Origin: Octopus bimaculoides
Lineage: Eukaryota
Direction of reading: 5' to 3'
NCBI RefSeq assembly: GCF_001194135.2
Contig: NC_068983.1
Span: 144,041,995 to 144,094,860 of the forward strand
Length of the DNA: 52,866 nt
The position numbers were made by a program, and so were the translations under genes. The number at the start of each line of letters is the position of its first letter. Positions within the stretch are counted from its first letter, which is position 1. Under the pieces are notes generated by a model. The model saw only the letters and a list, made by a program, of their open reading frames with translations. It searched no databases and was not told where the DNA came from. Below, piece by piece: positions 1,245 through 50,087 of this stretch.

Positions 1245-1626
1245 ATGCTTCCTAGAAATTTAGATCCTCCAAAATTCTGCAGCGGAGTAAGACTAATTGT
1301 GAAGTAAATGATGCCACATATTATAGAAGCGACTCTACTCTTGAGATGTGATAATATATTCATTACTAGAATTTCATTAATATATACTGATTTACCAGTA
1401 AAATTTAAAAGAGTACGATTTCCAATTATACTAAGTTTTGCAATATCCATCAACAAATCGCAAGGACAGGCATTATCAGTAAATGGTTTGGGATTACAGG
1501 TGCCTTGCTTCTCTCATGGACAATTGTATGTTGGATGTTCACATGTTGGAGGTTCAAAAAATCTGTTTTAATTATACTCCACTGGGAAAAACTCCTCATG
1601 TTGTTTATAAAGAAGATTTATCATAG
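1245..1626 (+). pseudogene. Helitron RepHel PIF1-like helicase C-terminal fragment, disrupted
   Basis: Translation MLPRNLDPPKFCSGVRL-IVK*-MMPHIIEAT...FKRVRFPIILSFAISINKSQGQAL...CFSHGQLYVGCSHVG...KTPHVVYKEDL matches the Helitron/PIF1 motifs LRNLDPPKLCNGTRL, FPxRLxFAMxINKSQGQ and FSHGQLYVxxSRV. Contains stops and a frameshift. Confidence 0.92.
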
Positions 1627-1795: not shown

Positions 1796-3727
1796 AGGCG
1801 CAGGGGTGACTGGGTGGTAAGAAGCTTGCTTCCGGTATAGCGTTTGTCAGTGGAATTGTTGGTTTTGCGAGTAAAACGTGTTTTTTTTGCTGTCTTAGCG
1901 GTGCGACGTTTTCCCTATTGTTTAATGGAGGGGCGTCGGGTGAGGAGTTGCGAAAATTCAAATTCTTCTTCTTCAAACTTTGTGAATTATCCTTCTTCAG
2001 ACTTTGTGTCATCTGAGGAAGAAATGGTGGAGTGTTTGAAGAGGATAGATGAAGTGATGGAGACGAAAAATTATGCAGAGGTGACGAAGGAAAGAAGCAA
2101 AGACGTGAGGCTGGAGGATATAAGCAAATTCAAGGAAATGATTAAAAGGGAAGGGAACGAAGTGAAGGTGTCCCCCCCACCCACCAAAGAAAAAAAAAAT
2201 GAGAAAACCATAATTTACAGAACATACTCTGTAGCAGTCTGGAAGATTGAAGTCATGGTGACGGATCAAATAGAAAAGGCTCTTAAACCAATCTGGCAAG
2301 GAATTTCCTATCTAGCCAGAGGGAAAAAATTTGAAACATTGGAGGTGCGATTTCGGGAGGTAGTTGAGAACTGATGAAGGGGTGCTTCTACCCGAATACC
2401 TTGGCAGACATGCTTCCGGTGTTAGGGTAGAAGACATACCTCCAGCAGTGGATGTAGCCTGGCTGGAAGCTGCCATACTGCTAGGCATGGAAGAGAAGGT
2501 GGTGGTCCTCCAGGCCACCAGAACACCCTACAGGAACTGGCAAGGACAAAGCCTCGATATGGTGGCACATGTTGCCGTGGAAGATATCGAAAATATGGGA
2601 GAGACAATTACGGTCGGAGACGAAACAGAGTGGGATGGAGGATTTCAGGGTGCTAGAAATGTGGCCTAAAAGGCCACATTAGAGCGGATTGTCCTCCACC
2701 ACTTGTGAAGGATAAGGAGAGACAAGAGAATGAGAAAGTGGTTGGTGCTCCACTACCCGTGGAGGTTTAGGAAAAGGAAAGTGAAGCGGCACCACAAAGA
2801 CCAGTACCAGCGTCGAAGAAGAGATGGACAATGAATGGGAAACAGCTGGGAAAAAGAGAAGAAAGAGAAAAAAGGCACACGCTGTAAAGGATGACTCTCA
2901 TCCCACACCCATCCAGCTATCACCCACACCCACCCAATTCCCACTCATACCCATTCTTCCCCAACCACTCCCTACAGCTCTCTCCATGCCCTACCTGATA
3001 TAAACGCAAGCACAAACACACAGGAGCCCCAAATTTTCCCAAATATGTTATAGTGTACAGTAGAGACAATGAAGAAGTGTATACCAAAATAGACTCGTGG
3101 GACAGAATTATAAAAGTGGATGTATCAGGCGTGAAGGGGATGCCCGAGTACCTTCGTTGTGTAGTGGCAGACCCAGAATATGTATCAAGGTTAAAGGAAT
3201 ATGAGGCAAACCATGACTATGAGTACTGGGTCAAGAAATTGGACACCAGCTTAATGCCTAAGCAAGTAAGTTTTTATAATAATTTAAAGAAACACAATGT
3301 AAACAGCCTTCGGAGGAATGGTAATTAGCTGTTGCTAATAATTGTGTTATAAACTAGGTTGAAAAAAACAAAAACGTTGTATTAACAGGTTCAATGAAGT
3401 CGCTCGGAGGTGGGGCCGAACGGCTTCATTTCATCTTTCATTATGTTTAATTCATCCTTTCCATTCGTTCTGTTTTATAGTCTCTACCTTGTGCTGTTAC
3501 CTCTATGTACGGCTTTCATAGCCAATATCATAAAATAAAGAAGCTTGCTTCCCAACCTCATGGTCCCGGGTTCAGTCCCACTGCGTGGCACATTGGGTAA
3601 ATGTCTTTTACTATAGCCTCTGGCAATAAGTGCTAGAATAAGACCTGGGGTTGATTTGTTCGACTAAAGGCGGTGCTCTAGCATGGGCACAGTCAAGTGA
3701 CTGAAAGAACTAATAGAAATAAAAGAA
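1796..3727 (+). mobile_element. tRNA-derived SINE family B, split by an insertion (1796-1833 plus 3538-3727)
   Basis: Head aggcgcaggggtgactgggtggtaagaagcttgcttcc resumes at 3553 as caacctcatggtcccgggttcagtcccactgcgtggcac (B-box-like GGTTCAGTCCC). Colinear with the uninterrupted copy at 51170-50835 (minus). Confidence 0.85.
1834..3537 (+). mobile_element. non-autonomous non-LTR retroelement with a gag-like ORF1 only (CCHC knuckle; probably Tx1/L1-related), decayed
   Basis: Perfect 15-bp TSD AAGAAGCTTGCTTCC at 1819-1833 and 3538-3552. Frameshifted ORF pieces 1844-2374, 2364-2669 and 3053-3328. CX2CX4HX4C knuckle C*KCGLKGHIRADC at 2651-2692, then basic EWETAGKKRRKRKK and a Pro-rich linker. A-rich 3' end. 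No RT or endonuclease motifs seen. Confidence 0.75.
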
Positions 3728-4953: not shown

Positions 4954-5194
4954 ATACTGAGTTTTAACAAACCTCTCAGTTTTTGTGATTGATATTGGCG
5001 ATTAGATTCACTTTAATCCTGAACTGATATTCCCCTTTCTTAAAGATCTCGAAAGAACAAAAGACTAAGTTATATCTTGGTGAGAGTCGATCTCAGAACG
5101 AAAGCATTAAGGAGCTAAATACTTCCAGGTATGTTATTCGTCACTCTACCAATTCCATCAATTCTCTGTCTTTGAGTGAAAATTTTAATATTCT

Positions 5195-5386
5195 TTTCTT
5201 ACTTCGGGACAAGGTCAGCACTTTTGAGGAGTTGGGTAGTCGATTACAATTGGTGCTTATTTTATCGGCCCCGAAAGGATGAAAGTCAAAGTCGAGCTCG
5301 GTGAAATTTGAACTCAGAACATGAAGACAGGTAAAATATTGTCAAGCATTTGTCTGACATGCTGACGACTTTGCCAGCTAACCGCC
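5195..5386 (-). mobile_element. tRNA-derived SINE family A
   Basis: Minus strand ggcggttagctggcaaagtcgtcagc...tgagttcaaatttcaccgagctcgactttgactttcatcctttcgggg. Confidence 0.85.
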
Positions 5387-5420
5387 TTAAGGCATTTTTA
5401 ATATTAAAAATATCACTATT

Positions 5421-5605
5421 GGGTGAGCTGGCAGAATCGTTAGCATACCGGGTAAACTGCTTAAGAGCATTGCGTTCGTCTTTATGTTCTGAGTTCAAAT
5501 TCCGCCGGGACGGTCTTTATCTTTCATCCCTTTTGGGAATGCACACTATGTAATTGACCTACTCTCTCTCCGAAATTGCTAGACTCGTCCCAAAATTTGA
5601 AACCA
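5421..5605 (+). mobile_element. tRNA-derived SINE family A
   Basis: ggtgagctggcagaatcgttagc...gagttcaaattccgcc, with A- and B-box-like segments. Confidence 0.85.
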
Positions 5606-5609
5606 ATAT

Positions 5610-5826
5610 TCTTTTCTTTTTTACTATAGGTACAAAGCCTAAAATTTGAGGGAGGTGGATAGTAGATTTCATTGACCCCCTTGCGTAACTGGTACTTATT
5701 TCATCGACCCCGAAAGGATGAAAGGCAAAGTCGACCTTGACGGAATTTGAATTCAGAACGTAGCGACGGGTGAAATTCCTCTAAGCATTTCGTCCAGCAT
5801 GCTAACAATTCTGCCAGCTCGCCGCC
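5610..5826 (-). mobile_element. tRNA-derived SINE family A
   Basis: Minus strand ggcggcgagctggcagaattgttagc...gaattcaaattccgtcaaggtcgactttgcctttcatcctttcggggtcgat. Confidence 0.9.
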
Positions 5827-5859
5827 TTTTTTGAAACCGATATTAAAAACGGTTCAAGG

Positions 5860-6150
5860 TTAGTTGATTGGTAGAGCAGGAAGAGTGCTGAATGAAATTG
5901 CTTGTGATATTAAGATTCATCTCTAGGTCCTGAGCTCGAATCTCGCACAGTTGATTTTCATCCTCATTGTAGACAAAAAATTAATTATGAATGAAAGCTG
6001 GGGTAGTTTTAATCAAACATTCCCTCTTCTCAAATTAGAGGCATTGTACATGCTAAAAATTAATATTAAATGTCCTACGGTATTTAGTTATGGCTCCTTA
6101 ATTTCAGAATTCGAATCCCATCTAGGTTAACTTTGTCCATTTACAACATT
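5860..6150 (+). mobile_element. highly diverged SINE remnants
   Basis: ggtagagcagg...gagctcgaatctc and gaattcgaatccc B-box-like segments at SINE-like spacing. Confidence 0.4.
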
Positions 6151-9683: not shown

Positions 9684-10240
9684 TTTGAATTTTTCCAATA
9701 ATAATAACGTATATGATTTCAGATGTTGTTTGTCTTGCCTTAACGTTTGTTGTCCTCTTTAACAATTATATATATTAGGCACGTGCCGTCAGTAATTACT
9801 CAGGGTAGGCAGTTAGTAACCTTTATGTAGTAAAACACACAAAAATAAGCGAAACACGGGCTCGCGACTGAGTTTTAGGCAGATCTAGTTCTGCGTTTAT
9901 AACACTTAAAGAAAACGGTGTTGTAGAAATGTATGCAGCACGTGTACTACAGCAGTACTATCCATAGCTTAAATACTGAGATTGAAAAGCAGAGGCGAAT
10001 TATTCCTACCTAATCTGTTATTTTTCAGTTTTATTTCAAGATTTCTTGCCATTAGAGAAAGAGGCGGTTTTTAATCTAGAGCCAAGGTTCCTTCAGTGGA
10101 ATTTCAACACCAACAGGGCATTTTGCAAGTATGTATGATTAGTATTATGCAGATTAGTATTTTTGTTTTATGTATGTCTTCTCGTGCATATACTTGCATA
10201 TCTAGACGTACTCATATATACTGAGATGATAAACTTCTTA

Positions 10241-10469
10241 TTTCTTTATTGCCCACAAGGAGCTAAACATTGAGGGATCAAACAAGGACAGACAAAGGGA
10301 TTAAGTCGATTACATCGACCACAGTGCGTCACTGGTACTTAATTTATCGACCCCGAAAGGATGAAAGGCAAAGTCGACCTCGACGGAATTTGAACTCAGA
10401 ATGTAACAGCAGACGAAATACCGCTAAGCATTTCGCCCGGCGTGCTAACGTTTCTGCCAGCTCGCCGCC
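10241..10469 (-). mobile_element. tRNA-derived SINE family A, near full length
   Basis: Minus strand ggcggcgagctggcagaaacgttagcacgccgggcgaaatgcttagcgg...gagttcaaattccgtcgaggtcgactttgcctttcatcctttcggggtcgataaattaagtaccag. Confidence 0.92.
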
Positions 10470-10479
10470 TTTGATAAAC

Positions 10480-12739: not shown

Positions 12740-12774
12740 GTTTCCGATGAAGAGCTCCGCTCGAAACATCAAAT
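12740..12774 (+). ncRNA. minimal type-I hammerhead motif in a PLE-type terminal repeat (U4C core, stem III mutated)
   Basis: ttt-CCGATGA-A-GAGC-tcc-GCTC-GAAAC-ATC-aaa. Flanks are homologous to 22375-22500 (minus) and 26680-26830. Confidence 0.65.
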
Positions 12775-16341: not shown

Positions 16342-16715
16342 TTATGTGTCCATATTTAGACGCGTTCTGTATTTTTTTATGAATATATTTTCTTTATTTA
16401 AACGTTCTTGCAAAGAAACTGTATCTTTGCACTGATAGAAGGAAAAAACTGTGAAATTTGGTTTGATGTTACCTGGGCATCGCTCTATGTGTTCACTTAA
16501 AGGAATCTGTCTGTACTGCGGGAACCGGATCTGCTCTTTAGGTTGAGTGGTTCTCGGTCTCAATGTCATTCTCGTCTGCTCTATATAGTGATGTCCACAA
16601 CCCGAGCAGGTTATTACATAAATTAGGTTCTCAGAGGTACAAGTGAAGTTGGTTTTAATTGTGAGCCTCTCTCCTTGTTTGAAAGGGAAATCCGAGCCTT
16701 CAAGTAGGTTGGGTC
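16342..16715 (-). mobile_element. Penelope-like element GIY-YIG endonuclease fragment
   Basis: KTNFTCTSENLIYVITCSGCGHHYIEQTRMTLR...QIRFPQYRQIPLSEHI...FYQC...ERLNKENIFIKKYRTRLN shows the (G)IY-YI(G) pair, the catalytic R, and the terminal E/N. Confidence 0.88.
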
Positions 16716-21469: not shown

Positions 21470-22316
21470 TTGGGTTGAGGAATAATCCATGAGCGTTTTT
21501 TTCAAATTTATTTTATACAAAACACTACAACAAATTAACCAATGATATACACTTCGTTGTTGTTTACGACTTCCTCCCATCATTCAAGAAGTTTTTCGGT
21601 GCCTCGGCGATAGAAATCTTCCAGTCTTGACTCAAAGAATTCTTCCAGCCAAGCCCTCATTTCCACGTCTTTATTGAACGATACACCGCACAAAGCGTTA
21701 GAAAGCGGTCGAAAGAAATGAAAATCTGATGGCATCAAATCTGAAGAATATGGAGGATGAGGCAGCACTTCCGATTCGAGTTCTTGTGGAGTGTTGATTT
21801 TTGTTTGTTTTCGCTCAAAGTGTGTGGAATCCAAGCGCCGTGTTTCTGAACCTTGTCCACTGAGTGAAGGTGGTTTACCACAGTTTTTTGATCACAATCC
21901 ATCTGCTCCGCTAATTCTCTGATTGTTTGATGTGGATTATCACGAAGAAGTTGATCCAGTCGCTCTTCATCGAACTCAACTGGTCGTCCTGAAATTAAAA
22001 TTCCTATTTTGAAGCGCGAAAACCAACGGCGAGCGGTACTTTGAGGTATTGCTCCTTCTCCACACACACAACATATCTCACGAGCAGCTTCGGCAACACC
22101 TCGAATAAATGCAAAATGCAAATGGTTTCGTAAACTCTCAGTTTTGTCTACTTCATATGTCATTTTAATGATCTGAAAATACACAAAATCAATAAAATCA
22201 AAAATCAAAACACTATATTGTAGCGCAATAAATTCTTTTTTAAATAATATAAAACATTTTGCCAATGCATTTTATTTGACAAAAAAAAAACGCTCATGAA
22301 TTATTTCTCAACCCAA
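21470..22316 (-). mobile_element. mariner (DD34D-type) transposon, internally deleted, both TIRs present
   Basis: TIRs TTGGGTTGAGGAATAATCCATGAGCGTTTTTTT and its inverse with TA on both sides. Protein pieces STARRWFSRF...SGRP...GAWIPHTL and HPPYSSDLMPSDFHFF (WVPHEL and YSPDL motifs). Confidence 0.93.
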
Positions 22317-22458: not shown

Positions 22459-22495
22459 TCTTTGACGTTTCGAGCTACGCTCTTCAACAGAAAGA
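22459..22495 (-). ncRNA. minimal hammerhead in a PLE-type terminal repeat (A6U core)
   Basis: Minus strand tcttt-CTGTTGA-A-GAGC-gta-GCTC-GAAAC-GTC-aaaga. 5-bp stem I and palindromic ACGT stem III. Confidence 0.7.
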
Positions 22496-25832: not shown

Positions 25833-25983
25833 NNNNNNNNNNNNNNNNNNNNNNNNNNNNNNNNNNNNNNNNNNNNNNNNNNNNNNNNNNNNNNNNNNNN
25901 NNNNNNNNNNNNNNNNNNNNNNNNNNNNNNNNNNNNNNNNNNNNNNNNNNNNNNNNNNNNNNNNNNNNNNNNNNNNNNNNNNN

Positions 25984-26048
<65 letters not shown>

Positions 26049-26713
26049 ATGTATGTTTGAATGTATGTGAGCTTGCATGTGTGCGCCTGTAAGTTTGATT
26101 GTGTACATATGTGTTCTTTGTATATGGCTGTATTTGTATGTATGTAGATGAGCGATCTTTGTATGTATACATATATCAATGTATTTTTATGCACGTATTT
26201 TATAAGCACACATACTCATACACGCAAACATGTATATTTATATATCTAAAATTGTATATTATCTTTACCAGTGGATACAAATAGCATGTTTGTGTTTAGA
26301 CGTTTATGTATCTGTGCATGTATGTAAATGTATATATGTCTGTATGGCGCATGAATGTACTCACGTATAAATAATGACAAATAGATATTCAAAGGCATCA
26401 GTTATTTATTGCAATAATTATTTATTATAACATAACAGTTGACATTGACTATTTTCACTTCTGTTCTAGTAAGCATTGTGCCAACAAAGACAATTCCCAG
26501 ATGGTATCTCAGTAAAGAAGGATTTCATGTGTCATATTTTAAAATCCTTCTTTACTAAAATCCCGTATGAGGATTGCATTTTTGGCAGGAAATTTAAAGT
26601 AATGGAATAGTAGTTGGTTTAAATATTCACTCTACAGTGCATATTGAGTACACGTGGACTGTTGGCGATTTTTTTTCCTCTTTCCTTTTCTTTTGGACTT
26701 TCCTATGTCTCCT

Positions 26714-26748
26714 GTTTCCGAAGAAGAGTTTTGCTAGAAACGTAAAAC
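26714..26748 (+). ncRNA. minimal hammerhead relic in a PLE-type terminal repeat
   Basis: gttt-CCGAAGA-A-GAGT-ttt-GCTA-GAAAC-GTA-aaac. Same family as 12740 and 22459; the stem II base pair is broken. Confidence 0.6.
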
Positions 26749-26914
26749 AAACACTCTTTCTTTCCTTTTCTAAGTGTCTTATTAATACTTTGCATGTACC
26801 ACCTCCTCGCGTTGTTGTTTTGTGTATATATAANNNNNNNNNNNNNNNNNNNNNNNNNNNNNNNNNNNNNNNNNNNNNNNNNNNNNNNNNNNNNNNNNNN
26901 NNNNNNNNNNNNNA

Positions 26915-26958
<44 letters not shown>

Positions 26959-27084
26959 TATGTATACATATATAGAGAGTATACACACATACACACATAC
27001 GCACACACATTCACAAACACAGTGACACAGAAAGACGTATATCTATGCGTGTGTTTGTGTGCGTGTGCGTATGTGTGCGTGTGT

Positions 27085-27270
27085 GTAATGTGTTTGTGTT
27101 TGTCCCTTCTCTTATAGCTTGCAAACCACTGTTGGTTTGATTACGTCTACATAACTTAGTCTTTCACCAAAGAGTTCGACAGAATGAGTACCAGACATAA
27201 AAACAAGTACTCAGGTCGATTTGTTCTAAATCTTTCGAGCGATGCTTCAACATGGCCGGAATCAACATTT
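27085..27270 (+). mobile_element. diverged SINE family B, 3' part
   Basis: ttacgtctacataacttag...gagtaccag...ggtcgatttgttc...catggccg, homologous to 10935-11160. Confidence 0.55.
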
Positions 27271-28125
27271 TGAATACGTATCGGTTATGCTGTAATGGAT
27301 ACATTCAGCAACCTTTATCCAATTTCTCATAATTGTTTACGTAATAGAAATTGTCTGTGTGTTGGTTGCGAAGAGCTAAACTGAATTTTCTTATAATTGA
27401 ATTTGTACGTATGATCAACGTAAACAATTATGTTTTCCAAAGATTTCATGCCTAATATTAGATATTATAATATATATAGTTTCTTATCAGCTGATGTAGT
27501 GTTGAGCTAACTTCTTAACAAACCAAATTTGCAGGGTACCAGCATCGATTTCATTTCACAACATGCGCTTTGTTAATACTATTGGCAGATTATATTTGAC
27601 ATTGCATTGTCTTCGCTTGTAAAATTTAATTTAAACATGGTACCAAAGTTCATTATTTAAAAGAAGTAGGATGGGAAATTGAAACGTTAATGATTTTCCT
27701 TAAGGCCATTACCGCCGTAGTTTTGATACCATATTCCTATTGAAACACACTACCATCGTTTCCATTAATGTTGAAAATAATGAGGTATTTAGTAATACAA
27801 TGTTAATAAATTTGCTGATATTTGGAAAATAAGTTAACATGGAATTTTGATGAAAGGTTTTAATTTAGACCACTTTAAAGCAAGAAATTTGTATTGTAGG
27901 ACCAGTGACGGTTTCAGGTCGATCGACCAAAAGAATTAAAGTGAAATGATTCAGACTCTAATTAAAACTGCATTGTGGTTTCTGTTTCCCGAATTTCCAT
28001 CCCTGATTATGTTATTTGCTATATGCTCCCGAAAATATGTAGAAGTGTACCTATTTAAGAAATGAATGTTCTGATGAGTACCACGAAGAAAAGCTAATAT
28101 CATAACTAGTTTTGATTTCTGTTTG

Positions 28126-28195
28126 AGAATCCAGTTTTGGGATTGTGTAAGAATTTATGAAGAATCCAGTTTTGGGATTATGTAAGAAATTATGA
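28126..28195. repeat. 2 x 35-bp tandem duplication
   Basis: agaatccagttttgggattRtgtaagaaWttatga twice, with 2 mismatches. Confidence 0.9.
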
Positions 28196-28596
28196 AATGT
28201 TTTTCTTGTCATTTTAAAAAATATTTTAGCTCATTTAATTTCAAGGATTATTTTGCTTGAAGACCGACAACCTTCTTGAATTTATAGTTTAATTTTCCAA
28301 ATGATTTTTAATTGAGCGGGTTTCCTTTATGCTCATCAGGAATTTCCAAGTCACTTCCGATTGAATAGATCGATGATCAAAGGGGTTCGTCTGTGATCAT
28401 CCAGTCATTTTGTATATCGGGGACTACAGTGCCTATTATATCCTTTCGTGTTTTAAACGATAAGATGTGATTTGAGGAAATTCGTCAGCTATTTCTAGTA
28501 GGTCAAACTTCCATGTACGGGCTCCTTCATTGATTAAAGCAAGATGTATTTACAAATGGTATCTAATTACATTAGCTATATTAGTGCAGCGGTTAG

Positions 28597-28726
28597 GGCG
28601 GTGAGCTGGCAGAATCGTTAGTACGCCAGGCGAAATGCTTGGCGGTATTTTGTCTGCCGTTACGTTCTGAGTTCAAATTTCGCCGAGGTCGACTTATCCT
28701 TTCGGGGTCGATGTAATCGACTTAAT
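28597..28726 (+). mobile_element. SINE family A with internal deletions
   Basis: ggcggtgagctggcagaatcgttag...gagttcaaatttcgccgaggtcgac. The body jumps from cctttcggggtcgat directly to gtaatcgactta. Confidence 0.9.
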
Positions 28727-28778
28727 CCGTTCATCGGACAGTTTTGTTAGAAATCTAACAAAACTGTCCGATGAACGG
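28727..28778. repeat. perfect 25-bp inverted repeat with a 2-nt loop
   Basis: ccgttcatcggacagttttgttaga-aa-tctaacaaaactgtccgatgaacgg. Confidence 0.97.
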
Positions 28779-28811
28779 GAACGTGAAACTCCGAGTAACA
28801 GTCTTTTGTTA
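28756..28811 (+). ncRNA. complete type-I hammerhead ribozyme candidate (U4C core)
   Basis: TAACAAAA-CTGT-CCGATGA-ACG-GGAA-CGT-GAAAC-TCCGA-GTA-ACAG-TC-TTTTGTTA. Stem I is 8+4 bp with a 2-nt bulge; stem II is 3 bp with a GNRA loop. Predicted cut after 28797. Confidence 0.75.
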
Positions 28812-30291
28812 TATTTCTGCTGCTTTTAAATAAAGTATATATATATATATATATGGCAGCGAGATTTGGCTGGTATGTGGTCACCGGAGGCTTTCTTGTC
28901 TGTTATGATATATGTCTCTGCTTTTATGGACCATGCGTCAATATGAGAGGACCGCTCAAGGCGAATTCCATAGTATTCGGCGTTCACACAAGATATCGAC
29001 ATTAAGTTGCATATAAAGATTGACTTTCATTATTTTTTTAATTATCTGTTTCAATCATGCAGATTACATTTCTTTTCTTTCAGTAAACATTCTCGTCTGG
29101 ATTAAATTAGCTAATCAACGATCAGTATGTCATAGATCTGATAATATTCTCTTGATGCTTAATACTCATCAGATCAATTCTACATGGTAAGTAGATGCAG
29201 CTCTAAAAATCCTTGATCTTTTAGCTGCAATCACTACAATATCATGATATATCGCACAGGTCTCCATCGTTAATTAACATAGTCGGAGTTACACAAAAAA
29301 CAACAAACAACGGCCGTTCGACCTACTAGCACTAGCAACAAAATCTCTCAATATTTATCCTCTTGTAGTGCCTGCTTGGTCAACAAACTGCAAATCCTTG
29401 GTCGATACGATAAAAACTGAGCTGTAGCTACAAAATAACAATGAAAAAAGCAATATCAATAACTATTTTTAATGGTTTAGTCAGAAGAGAACTACACGTT
29501 TATAAAGGACTCTGTGCTAGATTGGATAAGATTATCTTCAGAGCGGAAAATAGGATCAAATACTAAAGACAGCCAAAGGTCAGGTTGTGGTGTGAAAAAG
29601 GGTGGTGGATTTTTATCAGCTGGACCAGATGCAGATACGCGTTTACATTTTCAATAGTCATAAGACATTTGTATGTTGTGATTTAGTCCCATAGCAACTT
29701 TCATCGAGCAGACAAAGGAATTCCAGTTATGACTGTTCTACCTTCTTTATTTCAAACACGTATCGTGTACAGTACTACTTTTACACAATTTATTATTACT
29801 TTATCTTTTATTAAGACGCTAGATTCTGGCTTCAGGCATATTTGGCTGCTACTTAAAACAGGTTGAGAGACCATTGAGAAGCTCTTTCTTTGGACTGTTT
29901 CTATTAATACAGTTCTTATTGTTGATGCTGCTATTTTTTGCAGTTTCTGACATACATGAGATAATCGATGCCATATTGGTTTCTGTTTTATAGGAAGGTT
30001 ATATATGGCTTGTCTTTGTTTGTTTTCGTTTCTCTAACATCTTTTGACATCCTAATTGCTTGATTTAGTAGATAGAGCTCTACCTAAATATCCACTATCC
30101 ATCTTAACGTCACACTTATTTAGAACACAGTTTATACGGAAACTGCTCTCTCTATTTCCTGTGTAAATATATAGAACGCAAATACGTCTTTCATGTAGAA
30201 ATACAAAAAGGAATGTTAGCTATTCTGTCTGAAGTCACCTAACTGTTTTATAATCAAAGATAGCAGGAGTCCACTTAAGATTTTCACTTTC

Positions 30292-30570
<279 letters not shown>

Positions 30571-30573
30571 TAA

Positions 30574-30793
30574 GGCAGCGAGCTGGTAAAACTGTTAGCA
30601 CGCCGGGCAAAAAGCTTAGCTGTATTTATTCCGCGTTTTACGTTCTGCGTTCAAATTTCACCGCGGTCGACTTTGCCTTTCGTCCTTTCGGGGGTCGATA
30701 AATTAAGTACCAGTTGAGTACTAGAGTCGATGTAACCGACTTAACCCTCCTCAAAATTTCAGCACTTGTGCCTATAGTAGAGAGGATTATTAG
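30574..30793 (+). mobile_element. SINE family A
   Basis: ggcagcgagctggtaaaactgttagcacgccggg...gttcaaatttc...gtcgataaattaagtaccag. Confidence 0.88.
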
Positions 30794-30794
30794 C

Positions 30795-31087
30795 ATTATT
30801 TTTTTTCGTCACAGGTTTTTTTTTTGGAACTCCTGGAGTCTTGCGTACGTAGCGTGCTTACTACCTGCAGCCTACGGTACCAAGCTATTCGTTCTTTTCT
30901 GCTATCTAATACTTTACTGATTATTCTGGCCGTGTCAAGGAGGCAAACCTTTTGTAATAGTTCTACTGAGCACTCTATTCCAATTTCCTTTATATTCCCT
31001 TTGATGCCTTCTGATACTGCCACTAAGGCACCTACAAGATATGGCACTATCTTCCCGTGAGCCACTGCCTGACACTGCATCAAGGCA
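30795..31087 (-). mobile_element. short R4/Dong-like RLE 3' fragment
   Basis: KIVPYLVGAL...IKEIGIECSVELLQKVCLLDTARIISKVLDS, followed by a 3' UTR. Confidence 0.78.
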
Positions 31088-31174
<87 letters not shown>

Positions 31175-31180
31175 ATTATT
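31088..31180. repeat. (ATT)n array
   Basis: Direct reading. Confidence 0.97.
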
Positions 31181-32450
31181 GAGTGAGAGAGCAGTGCATG
31201 CCATCAAAGTGATACTGGGGTACAAATATACAAAACCCAGTATACCCANNNNNNNNNNNNNNNNNNNNNNNNNNNNNNNNNNNNNNNNNNNNNNNNNNNN
31301 NNNNNNNNNNNNNNNNNNNNNNNNNNNNNNNNNNNNNNNNNNNNNNNNNNNNNNNNNNNNNNNNNNNNNNNNNNNNNNNNNNNNNNNNNNNNNNNNNNNN
31401 NNNNNNNNNNNNNNNNNNNNNNNNNNNNNNNNNNNNNNNNNNNNNNNNNNNNNNNNNNNNNNNNNNNNNNNNNNNNNNNNNNNNNNNNNNNNNNNNNNNN
31501 NNNNNNNNNNNNNNNNNNNNNNNNNNNNNNNNNNNNNNNNNNNNNNNNNNNNNNNNNNNNNNNNNNNNNNNNNNNNNNNNNNNNNNNNNNNNNNNNNNNN
31601 NNNNNNNNNNNNNNNNNNNNNNNNNNNNNNNNNNNNNNNNNNNNNNNNNNNNNNNNNNNNNNNNNNNNNNNNNNNNNNNNNNNNNNNNNNNNNNNNNNNN
31701 NNNNNNNNNNNNNNNNNNNNNNNNNNNNNNNNNNNNNNNNNNNNNNNNNNNNNNNNNNNNNNNNNNNNNNNNNNNNNNNNNNNNNNNNNNNNNNNNNNNN
31801 NNNNNNNNNNNNNNNNNNNNNNNNNNNNNNNNNNNNNNNNNNNNNNNNNNNNNNNNNNNNNNNNNNNNNNNNNNNNNNNNNNNNNNNNNNNNNNNNNNNN
31901 NNNNNNNNNNNNNNNNNNNNNNNNNNNNNNNNNNNNNNNNNNNNNNNNNNNNNNNNNNNNNNNNNNNNNNNNNNNNNNNNNNNNNNNNNNNNNNNNNNNN
32001 NNNNNNNNNNNNNNNNNNNNNNNNNNNNNNNNNNNNNNNNNNNNNNNNNNNNNNNNNNNNNNNNNNNNNNGTTTTAAAATTTGAGATTACATAGAAAGTA
32101 TTTTGCGTAGGATATGGGCAGTTCCCATGAGCACTATCCTCTGAATTTCTGCCATTTTGGGGTTAACTGGCATCTGAGCTAGGTAGCAATCAGTCCCTTT
32201 TGCTATCATTCTCAGGGCACCTATGACAACAGGTATTGTTTTAGTCTTGAGGTTCCACATTTTACTAATTTCTATTTCAAGATCTTTATACTTGCTCAGC
32301 TTTTGGTAGGTCTTGACAGATACGTTTATATCGATTGGGACAGTCATATCAATGAAGAGGCATGATTTTTGTCTGAAGTCTTTCAATATGATGTCTGGCC
32401 TATTTGCATCTATCTTTCTGTCAGTTTGAATGGTGAAGTTCCTGAGGAGT
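31181..32450 (-). mobile_element. R4/Dong-like RLE LINE 3' end, with the 3' UTR probably spanning the gap and ending in (AAT)n
   Basis: NFTIQTDRKIDANRPDIILKD...FIDMTVPID...KLSKYKDLEIEISKMW...IPVVIGAL...MGTAHILRKILSM* (32450-32087), the PD-(D/E)xK-type RLE region. Continuity across the N gap is inferred. Confidence 0.82.
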
Positions 32451-43428: not shown

Positions 43429-44390
43429 CAGGGGTCGGAAAAAATAATGGAAACACCTTAAAATTTCAAGCAAATTTATTTTAATATGAGGTAGGACCGC
43501 CTTTGGCAGTAATTACAACTTGGATTCAACGAGGTATGGACTCGTACAAAGTTTGAATTGTTTCCAAAGGAATTTTTGTCCATTCTTCAGCTAAAACAGT
43601 CTCCAGTTCTTGTAGTGATGATGGTGGAGGATATCGACTCCTTCCTTGTTTTTCTAAAATGCGCCATAAATGTTCAATAATATTGAGATCTGGGCACTGT
43701 GGTGGCCAGATAAGATATTCAACTTTACTAGAATGTTCCTCGTGCCATTCAGTAAAAAATTTAGCTGTGTGAATTGGTGCATTATCATCCTGAAAGAATG
43801 CGTTTCCTCCGGAAACAGTTCCGCAACCATAGGATGAATTTGATAAAATAAAATGCTTAAACAGTCTTGACTATTAATTCTGCCATGAAGGAAAACCATT
43901 GAACCGGCAGAATTCCAAGATATAGACCCCCAAATGATTACAGATCCTCCTCCATATTTAACAGTTGGAAGAAGGCAGACTGGGTCAAATGCTTCTTTTG
44001 GCTGTCTCCACACGTATACTCGGCTGGTAGTCGGAAATAAGGTAAAGGATGACACGTGCGAGAAAATAACAGTCTTCCACTGCTCTAGGGACCAATCCTG
44101 TAGGTTTTTACTCCACTCTAAACGCTTTCCAACATTTATTTTTCAAAGTAGTTGTTTTCTGATTGCAGCCCTCTCGTGAAATCCGACTTTGTGCAGCTCC
44201 CAGCGAACAGTTTTTTGTGGAAACTGGGTTATCGAGGTGGTGATTAAGCTCTGCAGTAATTATGGAAGCTGTACTTTCATGATCCTTTCTAACAATTCGC
44301 ATAAGAGTTCGACGGTCCCTATCTTGAGCAGATGAAAGACTTTGGCCTTTTTTGGAGTAGGTGAAGAGAGGTGTTTCCACGGCATAGATT
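43429..44390 (-). mobile_element. Tc1-family (DD34E) transposon, 5'-truncated and decayed
   Basis: TA-CAGGGGTCGGAAAAAATAATGGAAACACC terminus. Protein pieces RDRRTLMRIVRKDH and SSFTLFPTTSRVYVWRQPKEAF...TVKYGGGSVIIWG...GRINSQD, plus frameshifted QDDNAPIHTA. Confidence 0.92.
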
Positions 44391-49584: not shown

Positions 49585-49872
49585 AATACGGGTGTGTGTG
49601 TGTGCTTGTGTGTATGTGTTTGTTTGTGTGTACTCACATTAGTACAGTCATGTATTTATATTTGTATTTTATAAATTTAAATTCTTATAATCTTATATTT
49701 TTGTATTACATTTCAGTTTTATTTTCCACCTGTATTCCATTACATAACCTTTACTTCCACATATATTTCAATGTACTTCATAATACATTTTCTATTCTTC
49801 AAGCATACTGTATCATTCTGTATCTTCAAGTATCACTCGTCATTTTGTAACGTAAAAAACTGTTGCCTATAA

Positions 49873-50087
49873 GGCGGAGAGCTGGCGGAATCGTTAGCAC
49901 GCCAGGCGAAATGTGTAGCGGTATTTCATCCGTCTTCATGTTCTGAATTCAAATTCCCCACAGGTCGACTTTGCCTTTCATCGTTTTGGGGTCGATAAAA
50001 TATGTACCAATTGAAAACTGGGGCCGATGTAATCGACTTATCTCTCTGCTAAAATTACTTGTCTAGTGCCAAAATCTGAAATCAATA
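49873..50087 (+). mobile_element. SINE family A
   Basis: ggcggagagctggcggaatcgttagcacgccaggcgaaatg...gaattcaaattcc...ggtcgactttgcctttcatc. Confidence 0.88.

What the first reader, a model, noticed from the sequence alone, without database searches (positions are those of the whole stretch)
28727..28811. Complete hammerhead candidate locked by a perfect antisense copy of its own 5' half
Seen: 28756-28811 has every type-I element: bulged 12-bp stem I, CCGAUGA core, 3-bp stem II with GGAA tetraloop, GAAA, stem III ACUC-C-GAGU, and a GUA site (cut after 28797), followed by AATAAA. Directly upstream, 28727-28751 is the exact reverse complement of 28754-28778, covering the 5' stem I strand, the whole core and half of stem II. 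Established: PLE insertions often carry a partial inverted terminal repeat at the 5' side. Inference: a plus-strand transcript has two mutually exclusive folds, a 25-bp hairpin (ribozyme off) or the active ribozyme. Fold-back integration would then auto-silence the ribozyme and make an inserted copy harmless to a host pre-mRNA, while transcripts starting within the hairpin would still cleave. Zero mismatches imply recent origin or selection.
Basis: partly seen in the sequence, partly recalled or inferred. Interest (0 to 1): 0.9.

Follow-up and report, generated by a model that had tools for sequence, protein, structure and literature searches.

The report
Lone hammerhead-like relic with snap-back hairpin
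A single, off-consensus hammerhead-ribozyme-like motif sits next to a perfect 25-base inverted copy of its own front half, fused to a truncated SINE; it is most likely a scar of one messy retro-insertion, not a built-in ribozyme switch.

Summary
The sequence observation holds. Arms 28727-28751 and 28754-28778 are a perfect 25-nt inverted repeat, unique in the window. 28756-28811 can be drawn as a type-I hammerhead.

The motif departs from consensus at three conserved positions: C instead of U4, and A10.1-U11.1 instead of G-C. Its helix III is a 4-bp stem with an impossible 1-nt loop. No Rfam hammerhead model matches it, even at E<=10. Chance is still unlikely: a hit of this quality with a 12-bp stem I appeared in 0 of 1302 simulated windows.

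The window comes from a gap-ridden, repeat-rich animal assembly. It also holds three decayed Penelope-type minimal hammerheads, two of them with the same C4.

The left arm begins exactly where a 3'-truncated SINE ends. The 262-nt composite (SINE head, hairpin, hammerhead, AATAAA, (TA)n) is bracketed by GCAGCG. I read this as one retro-insertion with reverse-transcriptase snap-back and template switching.

The hairpin (-46.6 kcal/mol) overwhelms the ribozyme fold (-8 kcal/mol), so it is a permanent lock, not a switch. Nothing indicates selection: there is one copy, no Penelope reading frame nearby, and the arm identity fits a young age. No further copies could be retrieved. Interest is low to moderate.

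The parts
28586..28591 (+). GCAGCG, left copy of a possible target-site duplication bracketing the whole composite
   Evidence: Same hexamer at 28856-28861. A shared GC-rich 6-mer in such flank pairs occurs in 0.28% of random pairs from this window. This is a post hoc observation.
28593..28728 (+). 5' part of a SINE copy: full 5' end, two internal deletions, and the last ~59 nt of the canonical element missing
   Evidence: Aligns with five other copies in the window. Homology ends at 28728-28731. It is 5.1% from the rough consensus. The canonical complete copy, 10240-10471(-), has a 12-nt TSD.
28727..28751 (+). Left arm: exact reverse complement of 28754-28778
28752..28753 (+). AA spacer at the centre of the palindrome
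   Evidence: sequence
28754..28778 (+). Right arm. It covers 2 nt upstream of stem I, the stem I 5' strand, the whole CCGAUGA core, the helix II 5' strand and the first loop base.
28756..28767 (+). Hammerhead-like stem I, 5' strand (UAACAAAACUGU)
   Evidence: Pairs with 28798-28811 as 5 bp + CU bulge + 7 bp
28768..28774 (+). Core box CCGAUGA (consensus CUGANGA; C at position 4)
   Evidence: Sequence; one core mismatch in the descriptor scan
28775..28784 (+). Helix II: ACG-GGAA-CGU (3 bp, GNRA-type loop; 10.1-11.1 is A-U)
28785..28788 (+). GAAA box (G12 A13 A14 A15.1)
28788..28796 (+). Helix III: ACUC-C-GAGU. Either 3 bp plus a CCG triloop in a monomer, or a 4+4-bp helix with a C.C mismatch in a dimer.
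   Evidence: the monomer evaluation uses 3 bp, and the dimer MFE of -27.4 kcal/mol forms the intermolecular helix
28797..28797 (+). A17; predicted cleavage would be 3' of this base (GUA site)
   Evidence: Sequence. Cleavage was not tested.
28798..28811 (+). Stem I, 3' strand (ACAGU-CU-UUUGUUA)
28829..28834 (+). AATAAA. The canonical SINE also ends in AATAAAG.
28836..28854 (+). (TA)n run at the 3' end of the composite
28856..28861 (+). GCAGCG, right copy of the possible target-site duplication

Best explanation
Region 28593-28854 is a single ~262-nt chimeric retro-insertion. Its 3' module (28754-28835) is a 5'-truncated piece of a hammerhead-bearing retroelement RNA, of the retrozyme or Penelope-associated kind. 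It carries a type-I hammerhead-like motif with a C4 core and ends in AATAAA.

Inferred sequence of events: reverse transcription ran from the 3' end to position 28754. The nascent cDNA then snapped back and copied 25 nt of itself, which made the perfect head-to-head palindrome. The enzyme then jumped to an internal site of a SINE RNA and ran to that RNA's 5' end. That accounts for a SINE that is complete at its 5' end but lacks its 3' tail.

The palindrome is therefore a structural scar. Its physical consequence is that any RNA containing both arms folds into a 24/25-bp hairpin and cannot form the hammerhead. This is incidental and not selected.

Shown: the anatomy, the energetics, the SINE junction and the flanking hexamer. 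Inferred: the order of events, the template-switch mechanism and the source element.
For: - The perfect 25-nt palindrome is unique in the window.
- The hammerhead-like motif is beyond chance: 0 of 1302 simulated windows reached its quality.
- The genome carries hammerhead retroelements. Three homologous Penelope-type minimal hammerheads lie in the same 53 kb, with a C-G to G-C swap in helix I between two copies.
- SINE homology stops at 28728-28731, exactly at the start of the left arm.
- The palindrome, hammerhead and tail show no similarity to the canonical SINE tail.
- No SINE remainder lies downstream. This argues against a simple insertion into a pre-existing SINE.
- The SINE 5' end is intact, and GCAGCG brackets the whole composite.
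- A bona fide SINE copy in the window shows the same kind of bracketing by a TSD.
- AATAAA plus (TA)n at the 3' end.
- Energetics: hairpin -46.6 versus hammerhead -8.0 kcal/mol.
- Arm identity is compatible with the youth of the adjoining SINE copy.
Against: - Only one copy is available, so there is no covariation, no consensus and no empty site.
- The 6-nt TSD is short and was noticed post hoc.
- The source element of the hammerhead module was not found. The window holds no related sequence, and neither do the metagenome or viral collections or the protein database.
- The fold-back could equally come from DNA-level break repair or replication template switching.
- The motif misses three conserved hammerhead positions and has no Rfam match, so descent from an active ribozyme is not proven.
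- Without reads, the palindrome cannot be confirmed as real sequence. The assembly has 15 N-gaps.
Confidence: 0.5

Rival explanations
1. SINE-hammerhead family. The composite is a member of a propagating SINE subfamily whose 3' module is a hammerhead, analogous to schistosome Sm-alpha/Sj-alpha. The fold-back is either present in the master copy or arose in this copy.
For: - A SINE head lies on the same strand directly upstream.
- The unit length (~243 nt, 28593-28835) is close to the canonical SINE (232 nt).
- Both end in AATAAAG, and the whole unit is bracketed by GCAGCG.
- SINE-like elements made of a Pol III promoter followed by a hammerhead are documented in Schistosoma (PMC6765202).
Against: - No second copy among the six SINE copies in the window.
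- This SINE copy has T4 runs at 28647-28650 and, within the left arm, at 28743-28746. These would tend to stop Pol III before the ribozyme (inference).
- No external copies could be retrieved.
Confidence: 0.15
2. The fold-back is a functional, possibly selected, self-silencing device: hairpin means ribozyme off, and transcripts starting inside the hairpin mean ribozyme on. It would protect host pre-mRNAs from cleavage.
For: - The folds are mutually exclusive, and the hairpin forms first during transcription.
- The arms are perfectly identical.
- Conformational control of hammerheads is known in viroid-like RNAs (PMC4209133).
Against: - A single copy.
- None of the three other hammerheads in the window has a fold-back.
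- Arm identity is explained by youth.
- The energy gap of ~39 kcal/mol leaves no switching.
- No promoter evidence exists for internal starts.
- The ribozyme is off-consensus and, as a monomer, has a marginal helix III. Metazoan min-HHRs tested in vitro were inactive as single motifs and cleaved only weakly as dimers or trimers, so there may be nothing to silence.
- The host-gene context is unknown.
Confidence: 0.05
3. Chance look-alike. A palindromic or template-switch scar whose right arm happens to read CCGAUGA, with a nearby GAAA and short stems. No ribozyme ancestry.
For: - Relaxed hammerhead descriptors give ~1.4 hits per simulated window, and 0.07 at the candidate's core and stem thresholds.
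- Two other relaxed hits in the real window look like noise (974, 26567).
- No Rfam match.
- The 56-mer is not unusually stable (z = +0.15), and the hammerhead fold (-7.2) is not its MFE (-9.2).
Against: - With the 12-bp bulged stem I, the hit quality was never reached in 1302 simulated windows.
- All of GAAA, A15.1-U16.1 and H17 are in register.
- A GNRA-type loop II and a stem I bulge 5 bp from the core resemble the tertiary-contact layout of extended type-I hammerheads. This is my recollection and was not tested.
- The genome demonstrably carries hammerhead elements, two of which share the same C4.
Confidence: 0.12
4. Assembly artefact. The left arm is a chimeric or mis-assembled inverted duplication that is not present in the organism.
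For: The window is a scaffolded assembly with 15 N-gaps of varied size. Perfect palindromes are a known class of library and assembly artefact (general knowledge).
Against: - The palindrome is 52 nt in total, shorter than a typical read.
- It lies 1.8 kb and 2.4 kb from the nearest gaps and has unique sequence on both sides.
- No other such palindrome occurs in the window.
Confidence: 0.08

Closest known systems
Canonical metazoan type-I hammerheads of non-LTR retrozymes and satellite-like repeats (Cervera & de la Pena 2014, 2020; PMC4209133, PMC7229834)
   Same: - Type-I topology.
- A short, nearly palindromic helix III that would favour a dimeric active form.
- GAAA, A15.1-U16.1 and H17 in register.
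- A short helix II capped by a small loop.
- Retroelement context.
   Different: - Not in a tandem repeat.
- C4 instead of U4, and A10.1-U11.1 instead of G-C.
- Helix II has 3 bp rather than 4.
- Stem I is a long open 12-bp helix.
- No Rfam Hammerhead_1 match.
Penelope-like element pLTR minimal hammerheads, and the inverted 5'-truncated copy typical of PLE insertions (PMC4209133; Craig et al. 2021)
   Same: - Hammerhead in a retroelement terminus.
- Head-to-head inverted duplication at the 5' side.
- A microsatellite at the insertion.
- Three true min-HHR copies in the same window, two with the same CCGA core.
   Different: - The candidate has a helix III and a short helix II.
- It has no unpaired base after A9 and no G10.1-C11.1.
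- No RT/GIY-YIG ORF is nearby.
- The inverted copy is only 25 nt and abuts a SINE.
Schistosome Sm-alpha/Sj-alpha SINE-like elements with hammerheads (PMC6765202 citing Ferbeyre 1998 and Laha 2000)
   Same: A SINE-type head followed on the same strand by a type-I hammerhead motif within a ~250-nt unit.
   Different: - Sm-alpha is a high-copy, often tandem family with a consensus, active ribozyme.
- Here there is a single copy, an off-consensus core and a palindrome between head and ribozyme.
- Pol III read-through is doubtful.
Chimeric retrocopies made by reverse-transcriptase template switching, and snap-back (self-primed) cDNA synthesis (from my own knowledge; not checked in the library)
   Same: - Two unrelated RNAs are joined 5'-to-3' in one insertion bracketed by a TSD.
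- The 5' partner is complete at its 5' end.
- A perfect inverted duplication sits exactly at the 5' end of the 3' partner.
   Different: The mechanism was not demonstrated here. The responsible RT is unknown, and the SINE partner is truncated internally rather than at its 3' end.
Alternative-fold control of hammerheads in viroid-like RNAs (PMC4209133)
   Same: A competing structure prevents the catalytic fold.
   Different: In viroids the competing folds are of comparable energy, conserved, and part of a replication cycle. Here the competitor is a ~39 kcal/mol more stable perfect hairpin in a single genomic copy.

Membership tests
Hammerhead ribozyme (type I) | Core box C3-U4-G5-A6-N7-G8-A9 | tested here: not met
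   28768-28774 reads CCGAUGA, with C at position 4. Per Perreault et al. 2011, U4C considerably lowers activity in vitro but is tolerated in one viroid.
Hammerhead ribozyme (type I) | G12-A13-A14, the A15.1-U16.1 pair, and H17 (not G) at the cleavage site | tested here: met
   GAAA at 28785-28788, U16.1 at 28796, A17 at 28797
Hammerhead ribozyme (type I) | Three helices radiating from the core, with helix I open | tested here: met
   Stem I has 5+7 bp with a CU bulge, helix II has 3 bp, and helix III has 3 bp plus a triloop (or 4+4 bp in a dimer). The fold evaluates to -7.2 kcal/mol but is not the MFE of -9.2.
Hammerhead ribozyme (type I) | Conserved G10.1-C11.1 pair closing helix II | tested here: not met
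   The pair is A28775-U28784. The conservation is stated in PMC4209133.
Hammerhead ribozyme (type I) | Match to curated covariance models (Rfam Hammerhead families) | tested here: not met
   No hit at gathering score or at E<=10 on 301 nt and 79 nt. The models also miss the min-HHR at 22464, so sensitivity for divergent animal forms is limited.
Hammerhead ribozyme (type I) | Covariation in helices across homologues | not testable with these tools
   No homologue was found in the window, the metagenome or viral collections, or the protein database.
Hammerhead ribozyme (type I) | Site-specific self-cleavage | not testable with these tools
   Needs an in vitro transcription and cleavage assay.
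Penelope-like element (pLTR hammerhead) | Adjacent ORF with RT and GIY-YIG endonuclease | tested here: not met
   No Pfam family at E<=0.1 in six frames from ~26.98 to 30.29 kb.
Penelope-like element (pLTR hammerhead) | min-HHR architecture: no helix III, long helix II, an unpaired base after A9, an ACGU-type palindrome | tested here: not met
   The candidate has a helix III and a 3-bp helix II. The architecture is met instead by 12744(+), 22464(-) and 26718(+).
Penelope-like element (pLTR hammerhead) | Inverted 5'-truncated copy next to the direct copy | tested here: inconclusive
   A 25-nt head-to-head inverted copy exists, but it is very short, abuts a SINE, and has no PLE body.
SINE-like hammerhead elements (Sm-alpha type) | SINE / Pol III-type head followed by a hammerhead in one unit | tested here: inconclusive
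   The head and motif lie on the same strand, and the unit is bracketed by GCAGCG. ARAGORN finds no tRNA, and T4 runs precede the ribozyme.
SINE-like hammerhead elements (Sm-alpha type) | Multi-copy, often tandem family | tested here: not met
   A single copy in 52.9 kb, with five other SINE copies lacking the module. Genome-wide copy number is not testable here.
Non-LTR retrozyme | Tandem repeats of ~170-400 nt, each with a type-I hammerhead | tested here: not met
   No tandem array at the locus.
microRNA / hairpin-RNA gene | Match to a curated precursor family at its gathering score | tested here: not met
   The best hit is mir-1892 at 28.1 bits against a gathering score of 86. Hits occur on both strands, which is generic for a perfect hairpin.

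The most novel reading that the evidence does not exclude
This genome's hammerhead-bearing retroelements natively use a C4 core (CCGAUGA). It is seen in three of the four hammerhead-like motifs in this window, and the single U could be CpG-to-TpG decay. One such ribozyme module has been captured as the 3' end of a SINE, giving a mollusc-type analogue of schistosome Sm-alpha. Snap-back during its reverse transcription then yields copies whose ribozyme is locked by its own antisense.
Probability: 0.12. Interest if true: 0.55.

Novelty: new member of a known kind. Interest (0 to 1): 0.27.

Why it matters
If the composite proved to be one member of a family, it would extend SINE-borne hammerheads beyond flatworms. 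It would also document a natural U4C core in animal retroelement ribozymes, which is useful for ribozyme search descriptors that currently demand CUGANGA.

As it stands, it mainly illustrates two points. Retro-insertion by-products such as snap-back and template switching can inactivate an embedded ribozyme. Relaxed hammerhead descriptors need a per-window false-positive estimate, which here was 0.07 before stem I length is taken into account.

Tried and rejected
1. Rfam scans at gathering score and at E<=10 gave no hammerhead. Only sub-threshold miRNA-hairpin hits came up for the palindrome.
2. I looked for more copies:
   - Exact, 3-mismatch, blastn-short and nhmmer searches of the window found none.
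   - One metagenome scan and one viral scan with a degenerate hammerhead pattern returned 9 loci. All were GC-rich sequences with no resemblance outside the pattern, so I treat them as chance matches.
   - A concatenated six-frame peptide query against 5.8 billion proteins found nothing.
3. I tried to sample the same genome through multicopy transposon proteins.
   - The mariner HTH ORF and a PIF1-like fragment hit only other taxa at <=70% identity.
   - An exact look-up failed.
   - No further genomic DNA could be fetched, and the organism remains unidentified. My impression that the SINE is cephalopod-like is recollection only.
4. Is the left arm, or the 3' tail, a diverged canonical SINE tail? 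Local alignment against shuffles gave no signal.
5. Did the hammerhead element insert into a SINE whose remainder lies downstream? It was not found.
6. Is the candidate homologous to the min-HHR family in the window? The only above-noise alignment was driven by the shared (TA)n run, so I rejected it.
7. A Penelope ORF nearby: none.
8. An ORF at 16345-16713(-) reminded me of a GIY-YIG motif, but Pfam gives nothing even at E<=10.
9. tRNA detection in the SINE heads: none.

Full report
**1. The observation**

The inverted repeat is exactly as described. Arms 28727-28751 and 28754-28778 are 25 nt each, 100% complementary, and separated by AA. Nothing like it is expected by chance. It is also the only long, non-low-complexity, short-spacer palindrome in the window; the next best is 15 nt.

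Region 28756-28811 can be drawn as a type-I hammerhead:
- Stem I: UAACAAAACUGU pairs with ACAGU-CU-UUUGUUA, giving 5 bp, a CU bulge, then 7 bp.
- Core: CCGAUGA, 28768-28774.
- Helix II: ACG-GGAA-CGU.
- GAAA: 28785-28788.
- Helix III: ACUC-C-GAGU.
- A17 at 28797.
- AATAAA follows at 28829-28834, then a (TA)n run at 28836-28854.

**2. How good a hammerhead is it?**

It departs from the family at three conserved places.
- Position 4 is C, not U.
- The pair closing helix II is A-U, not the G10.1-C11.1 that Cervera and de la Pena call highly conserved.
- A 4-bp helix III with a 1-nt loop cannot form. A monomer gets 3 bp plus a triloop. A dimer gets a 4+4-bp helix with a C.C mismatch, which the cofold MFE of -27.4 kcal/mol does adopt.

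The hammerhead fold of the 56-mer evaluates to -7.2 kcal/mol. That is above the MFE of -9.2, and the sequence is no more stable than its shuffles (z = +0.15).

No Rfam hammerhead model matches, either at gathering score on the whole window or at E<=10 on 301 nt or 79 nt. This negative is only moderately informative, because Rfam also misses a Penelope-type minimal hammerhead in the same window.

Perreault et al. note that U4C 'considerably decreases activity in vitro' yet is tolerated in a viroid. C4 alone therefore does not prove the motif is dead.

**3. Chance**

I wrote a descriptor and ran it on first-order Markov simulations of the window, both strands. It requires the core and GAAA boxes, U16.1 and H17 with at most one mismatch in total, stem I >=5, helix II >=3 and helix III >=3.

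Hits occur 0.071 times per simulated window, which is not negligible. None of 1302 simulated windows reached a total stem I of 12 bp, and >=11 bp occurred at 0.003 per window.

The real window gave five distinct hits at the relaxed level. Two look like noise, and three are informative.

**4. Context: what kind of DNA this is**

The window is AT-rich (35% GC) and full of microsatellites. It has 15 N-runs of varied length, so it is a scaffolded assembly of an animal genome. The candidate lies in the contig 26914-31248, more than 1.8 kb from any gap.

Transposon remains include:
- a mariner HTH ORF;
- a Tc1-type DDE_3 fragment;
- a PIF1-like helicase fragment;
- six copies of one SINE.

A complete SINE copy at 10240-10471(-) is about 232 nt, ends in AATAAAGAAATA, and has a perfect 12-nt target-site duplication.

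The window also holds three homologous copies of a Penelope-type minimal hammerhead:
- 12744-12770(+), core CCGAUGA;
- 22464-22490(-), core CUGUUGA;
- 26718-26744(+), core CCGAAGA.

All three have an unpaired A after A9, helix II GAGC/GCUC, no helix III, and a shared downstream block TTCCCGAGCGTC. Two copies differ by a compensatory C-G to G-C swap in helix I.

The genome does, then, carry hammerhead retroelements. Two of these three share the candidate's C4. The one U could be CpG-to-TpG decay, since CpG o/e is 0.76.

**5. Anatomy of the locus**

SINE homology on the plus strand runs from about 28593 to 28728-28731 and stops exactly where the left arm starts. This SINE copy has an intact 5' end but lacks the last ~59 nt of the canonical element.

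Several alternatives were checked and excluded.
- The left arm, right arm, hammerhead 3' half and tail have no significant similarity to the canonical SINE tail.
- No SINE remainder lies downstream.
- No Pfam domain occurs in any of six frames from ~26.98 to 30.29 kb, so there is no Penelope ORF.

The composite 28593-28854 is bracketed by GCAGCG at 28586-28591 and 28856-28861. A shared GC-rich hexamer in such flank pairs occurs in 0.28% of random pairs from this window. I noticed this post hoc and the hexamer is short, so I treat it as suggestive only.

**6. Energetics of the 'lock'**

For 28720-28815 the MFE is the 24/25-bp hairpin at -46.6 kcal/mol (z = -9.5). The hammerhead structure in that context is -8.0 kcal/mol, a Boltzmann weight of about 1e-28.

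The left arm is transcribed first, so the hairpin also wins kinetically (inference).

**7. Most likely explanation**

I read the locus as one chimeric retro-insertion. Reverse transcription of a hammerhead-bearing retroelement RNA ran from its AATAAA end to 28754. The cDNA snapped back on itself for 25 nt. The enzyme then switched to a SINE RNA and ran to that RNA's 5' end.

This single scenario explains:
- the head-to-head perfect palindrome;
- a SINE that is complete at its 5' end and truncated at its 3' end;
- the absence of a SINE remainder;
- the common bracketing hexamer.

The mechanism is inferred, not shown. DNA-level fold-back repair or replication template switching would give the same palindrome.

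Perfect arm identity needs no selection. The adjoining SINE copy is only 5.1% from its rough consensus, so two coeval 25-nt arms would be identical with probability of about 0.08, and more if the hairpin is younger.

None of the three other hammerheads in the window has a fold-back over its core.

**8. Rivals**

- A propagating SINE-hammerhead family like schistosome Sm-alpha cannot be excluded without the rest of the genome. I give it about 0.15.
- A chance look-alike is unlikely given the stem I statistics and the genomic context (about 0.12).
- An assembly artefact is unlikely because of the palindrome's position and small size, but it needs reads to settle (about 0.08).

**9. Comparison with what is known**

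It works like, and probably derives from, the type-I hammerheads of animal retroelements. Penelope-like elements are known to carry hammerheads in their pLTRs and inverted 5' copies at insertions.

Strict membership in the hammerhead family fails on U4, on G10.1-C11.1 and on the Rfam match. It cannot be tested for covariation or for cleavage. Membership in Penelope elements, retrozymes or Sm-alpha-type SINEs fails on at least one defining feature each, or is inconclusive.

**10. Limits**

I could not obtain any other DNA from this genome.
- Three protein searches found no same-species sequences.
- An exact look-up failed.

All statements about family size, ancestry of C4 and the source element therefore rest on 52.9 kb.

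**Verdict**

This is a real and curious-looking locus, but most probably an ordinary by-product of retrotransposition in a hammerhead-rich genome. It is a new member of a known kind, of low to moderate interest.

Noticed in passing
window 12740-12774 (+), 22459-22495 (-), 26713-26749 (+): Three decayed, homologous copies of a Penelope-type minimal hammerhead: an extra A after A9, helix II GAGC/GCUC, no helix III, and a conserved TTCCCGAGCGTC about 25 nt downstream. Two of the three have C at core position 4 (CCGAUGA, CCGAAGA), like the candidate. Helix I shows a C-G to G-C swap between two copies. Rfam detects none of them.
   Followed up: partly
window 5084-5424 (-), 5523-5863 (-), 10240-10471 (-), 28593-28728 (+), 30590-30800 (+), 49870-50045 (+): Six copies of one SINE family with at least two different 3' tails. 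The copy at 10240-10471 is complete, with a perfect 12-nt TSD AGAAGTTTATCA. ARAGORN sees no tRNA in any copy.
   Followed up: partly
window, 15 N-runs (e.g. 25833-25983, 26834-26913, 31249-32070): The window is a scaffolded assembly with gaps of 34-822 N, mostly next to microsatellites. Several 'ORFs' in the mechanical list simply run through N-runs or simple repeats.
   Followed up: yes
window 21735-22265 (-) and 43529-43870 (-): A mariner-type HTH_48 ORF (E = 6.6e-10) lies directly beside the min-HHR at 22464. There is also a separate Tc1-type DDE_3 fragment (E = 2.6e-12). The closest database proteins are from other phyla at <=70% identity.
   Followed up: partly
window 1308-1571 (+): An 87-aa ORF resembling the C-terminus of PIF1/Helitron-type helicases. 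The best hits are named PIF1-like, come from spiders, and share 58-64% identity.
   Followed up: partly
window 1841-3328 (+): A GC-richer stretch (43%) holds several 90-177-aa ORFs of normal complexity. One has a sub-threshold RdRP_2 hit (17.9 bits against a cut-off of 27, E = 0.0015), probably chance. It could be a retrocopy or a viral-derived fragment.
   Followed up: no
window 16345-16713 (-): A 123-aa open frame containing LIYVITCSGCGHHYIEQT, which reminded me of a GIY-YIG endonuclease motif as in Penelope elements. Pfam gives no hit even at E<=10, so this is unconfirmed.
   Followed up: partly
window 26486-26525 / 26542-26581: A 40-nt, 78% complementary inverted repeat with a 16-nt spacer lies about 135 nt upstream of the min-HHR at 26718. 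Its origin is unknown.
   Followed up: no
window 28126-28196: A 35-nt tandem duplication (2 copies, 94% identical) 530 nt upstream of the candidate.
   Followed up: no
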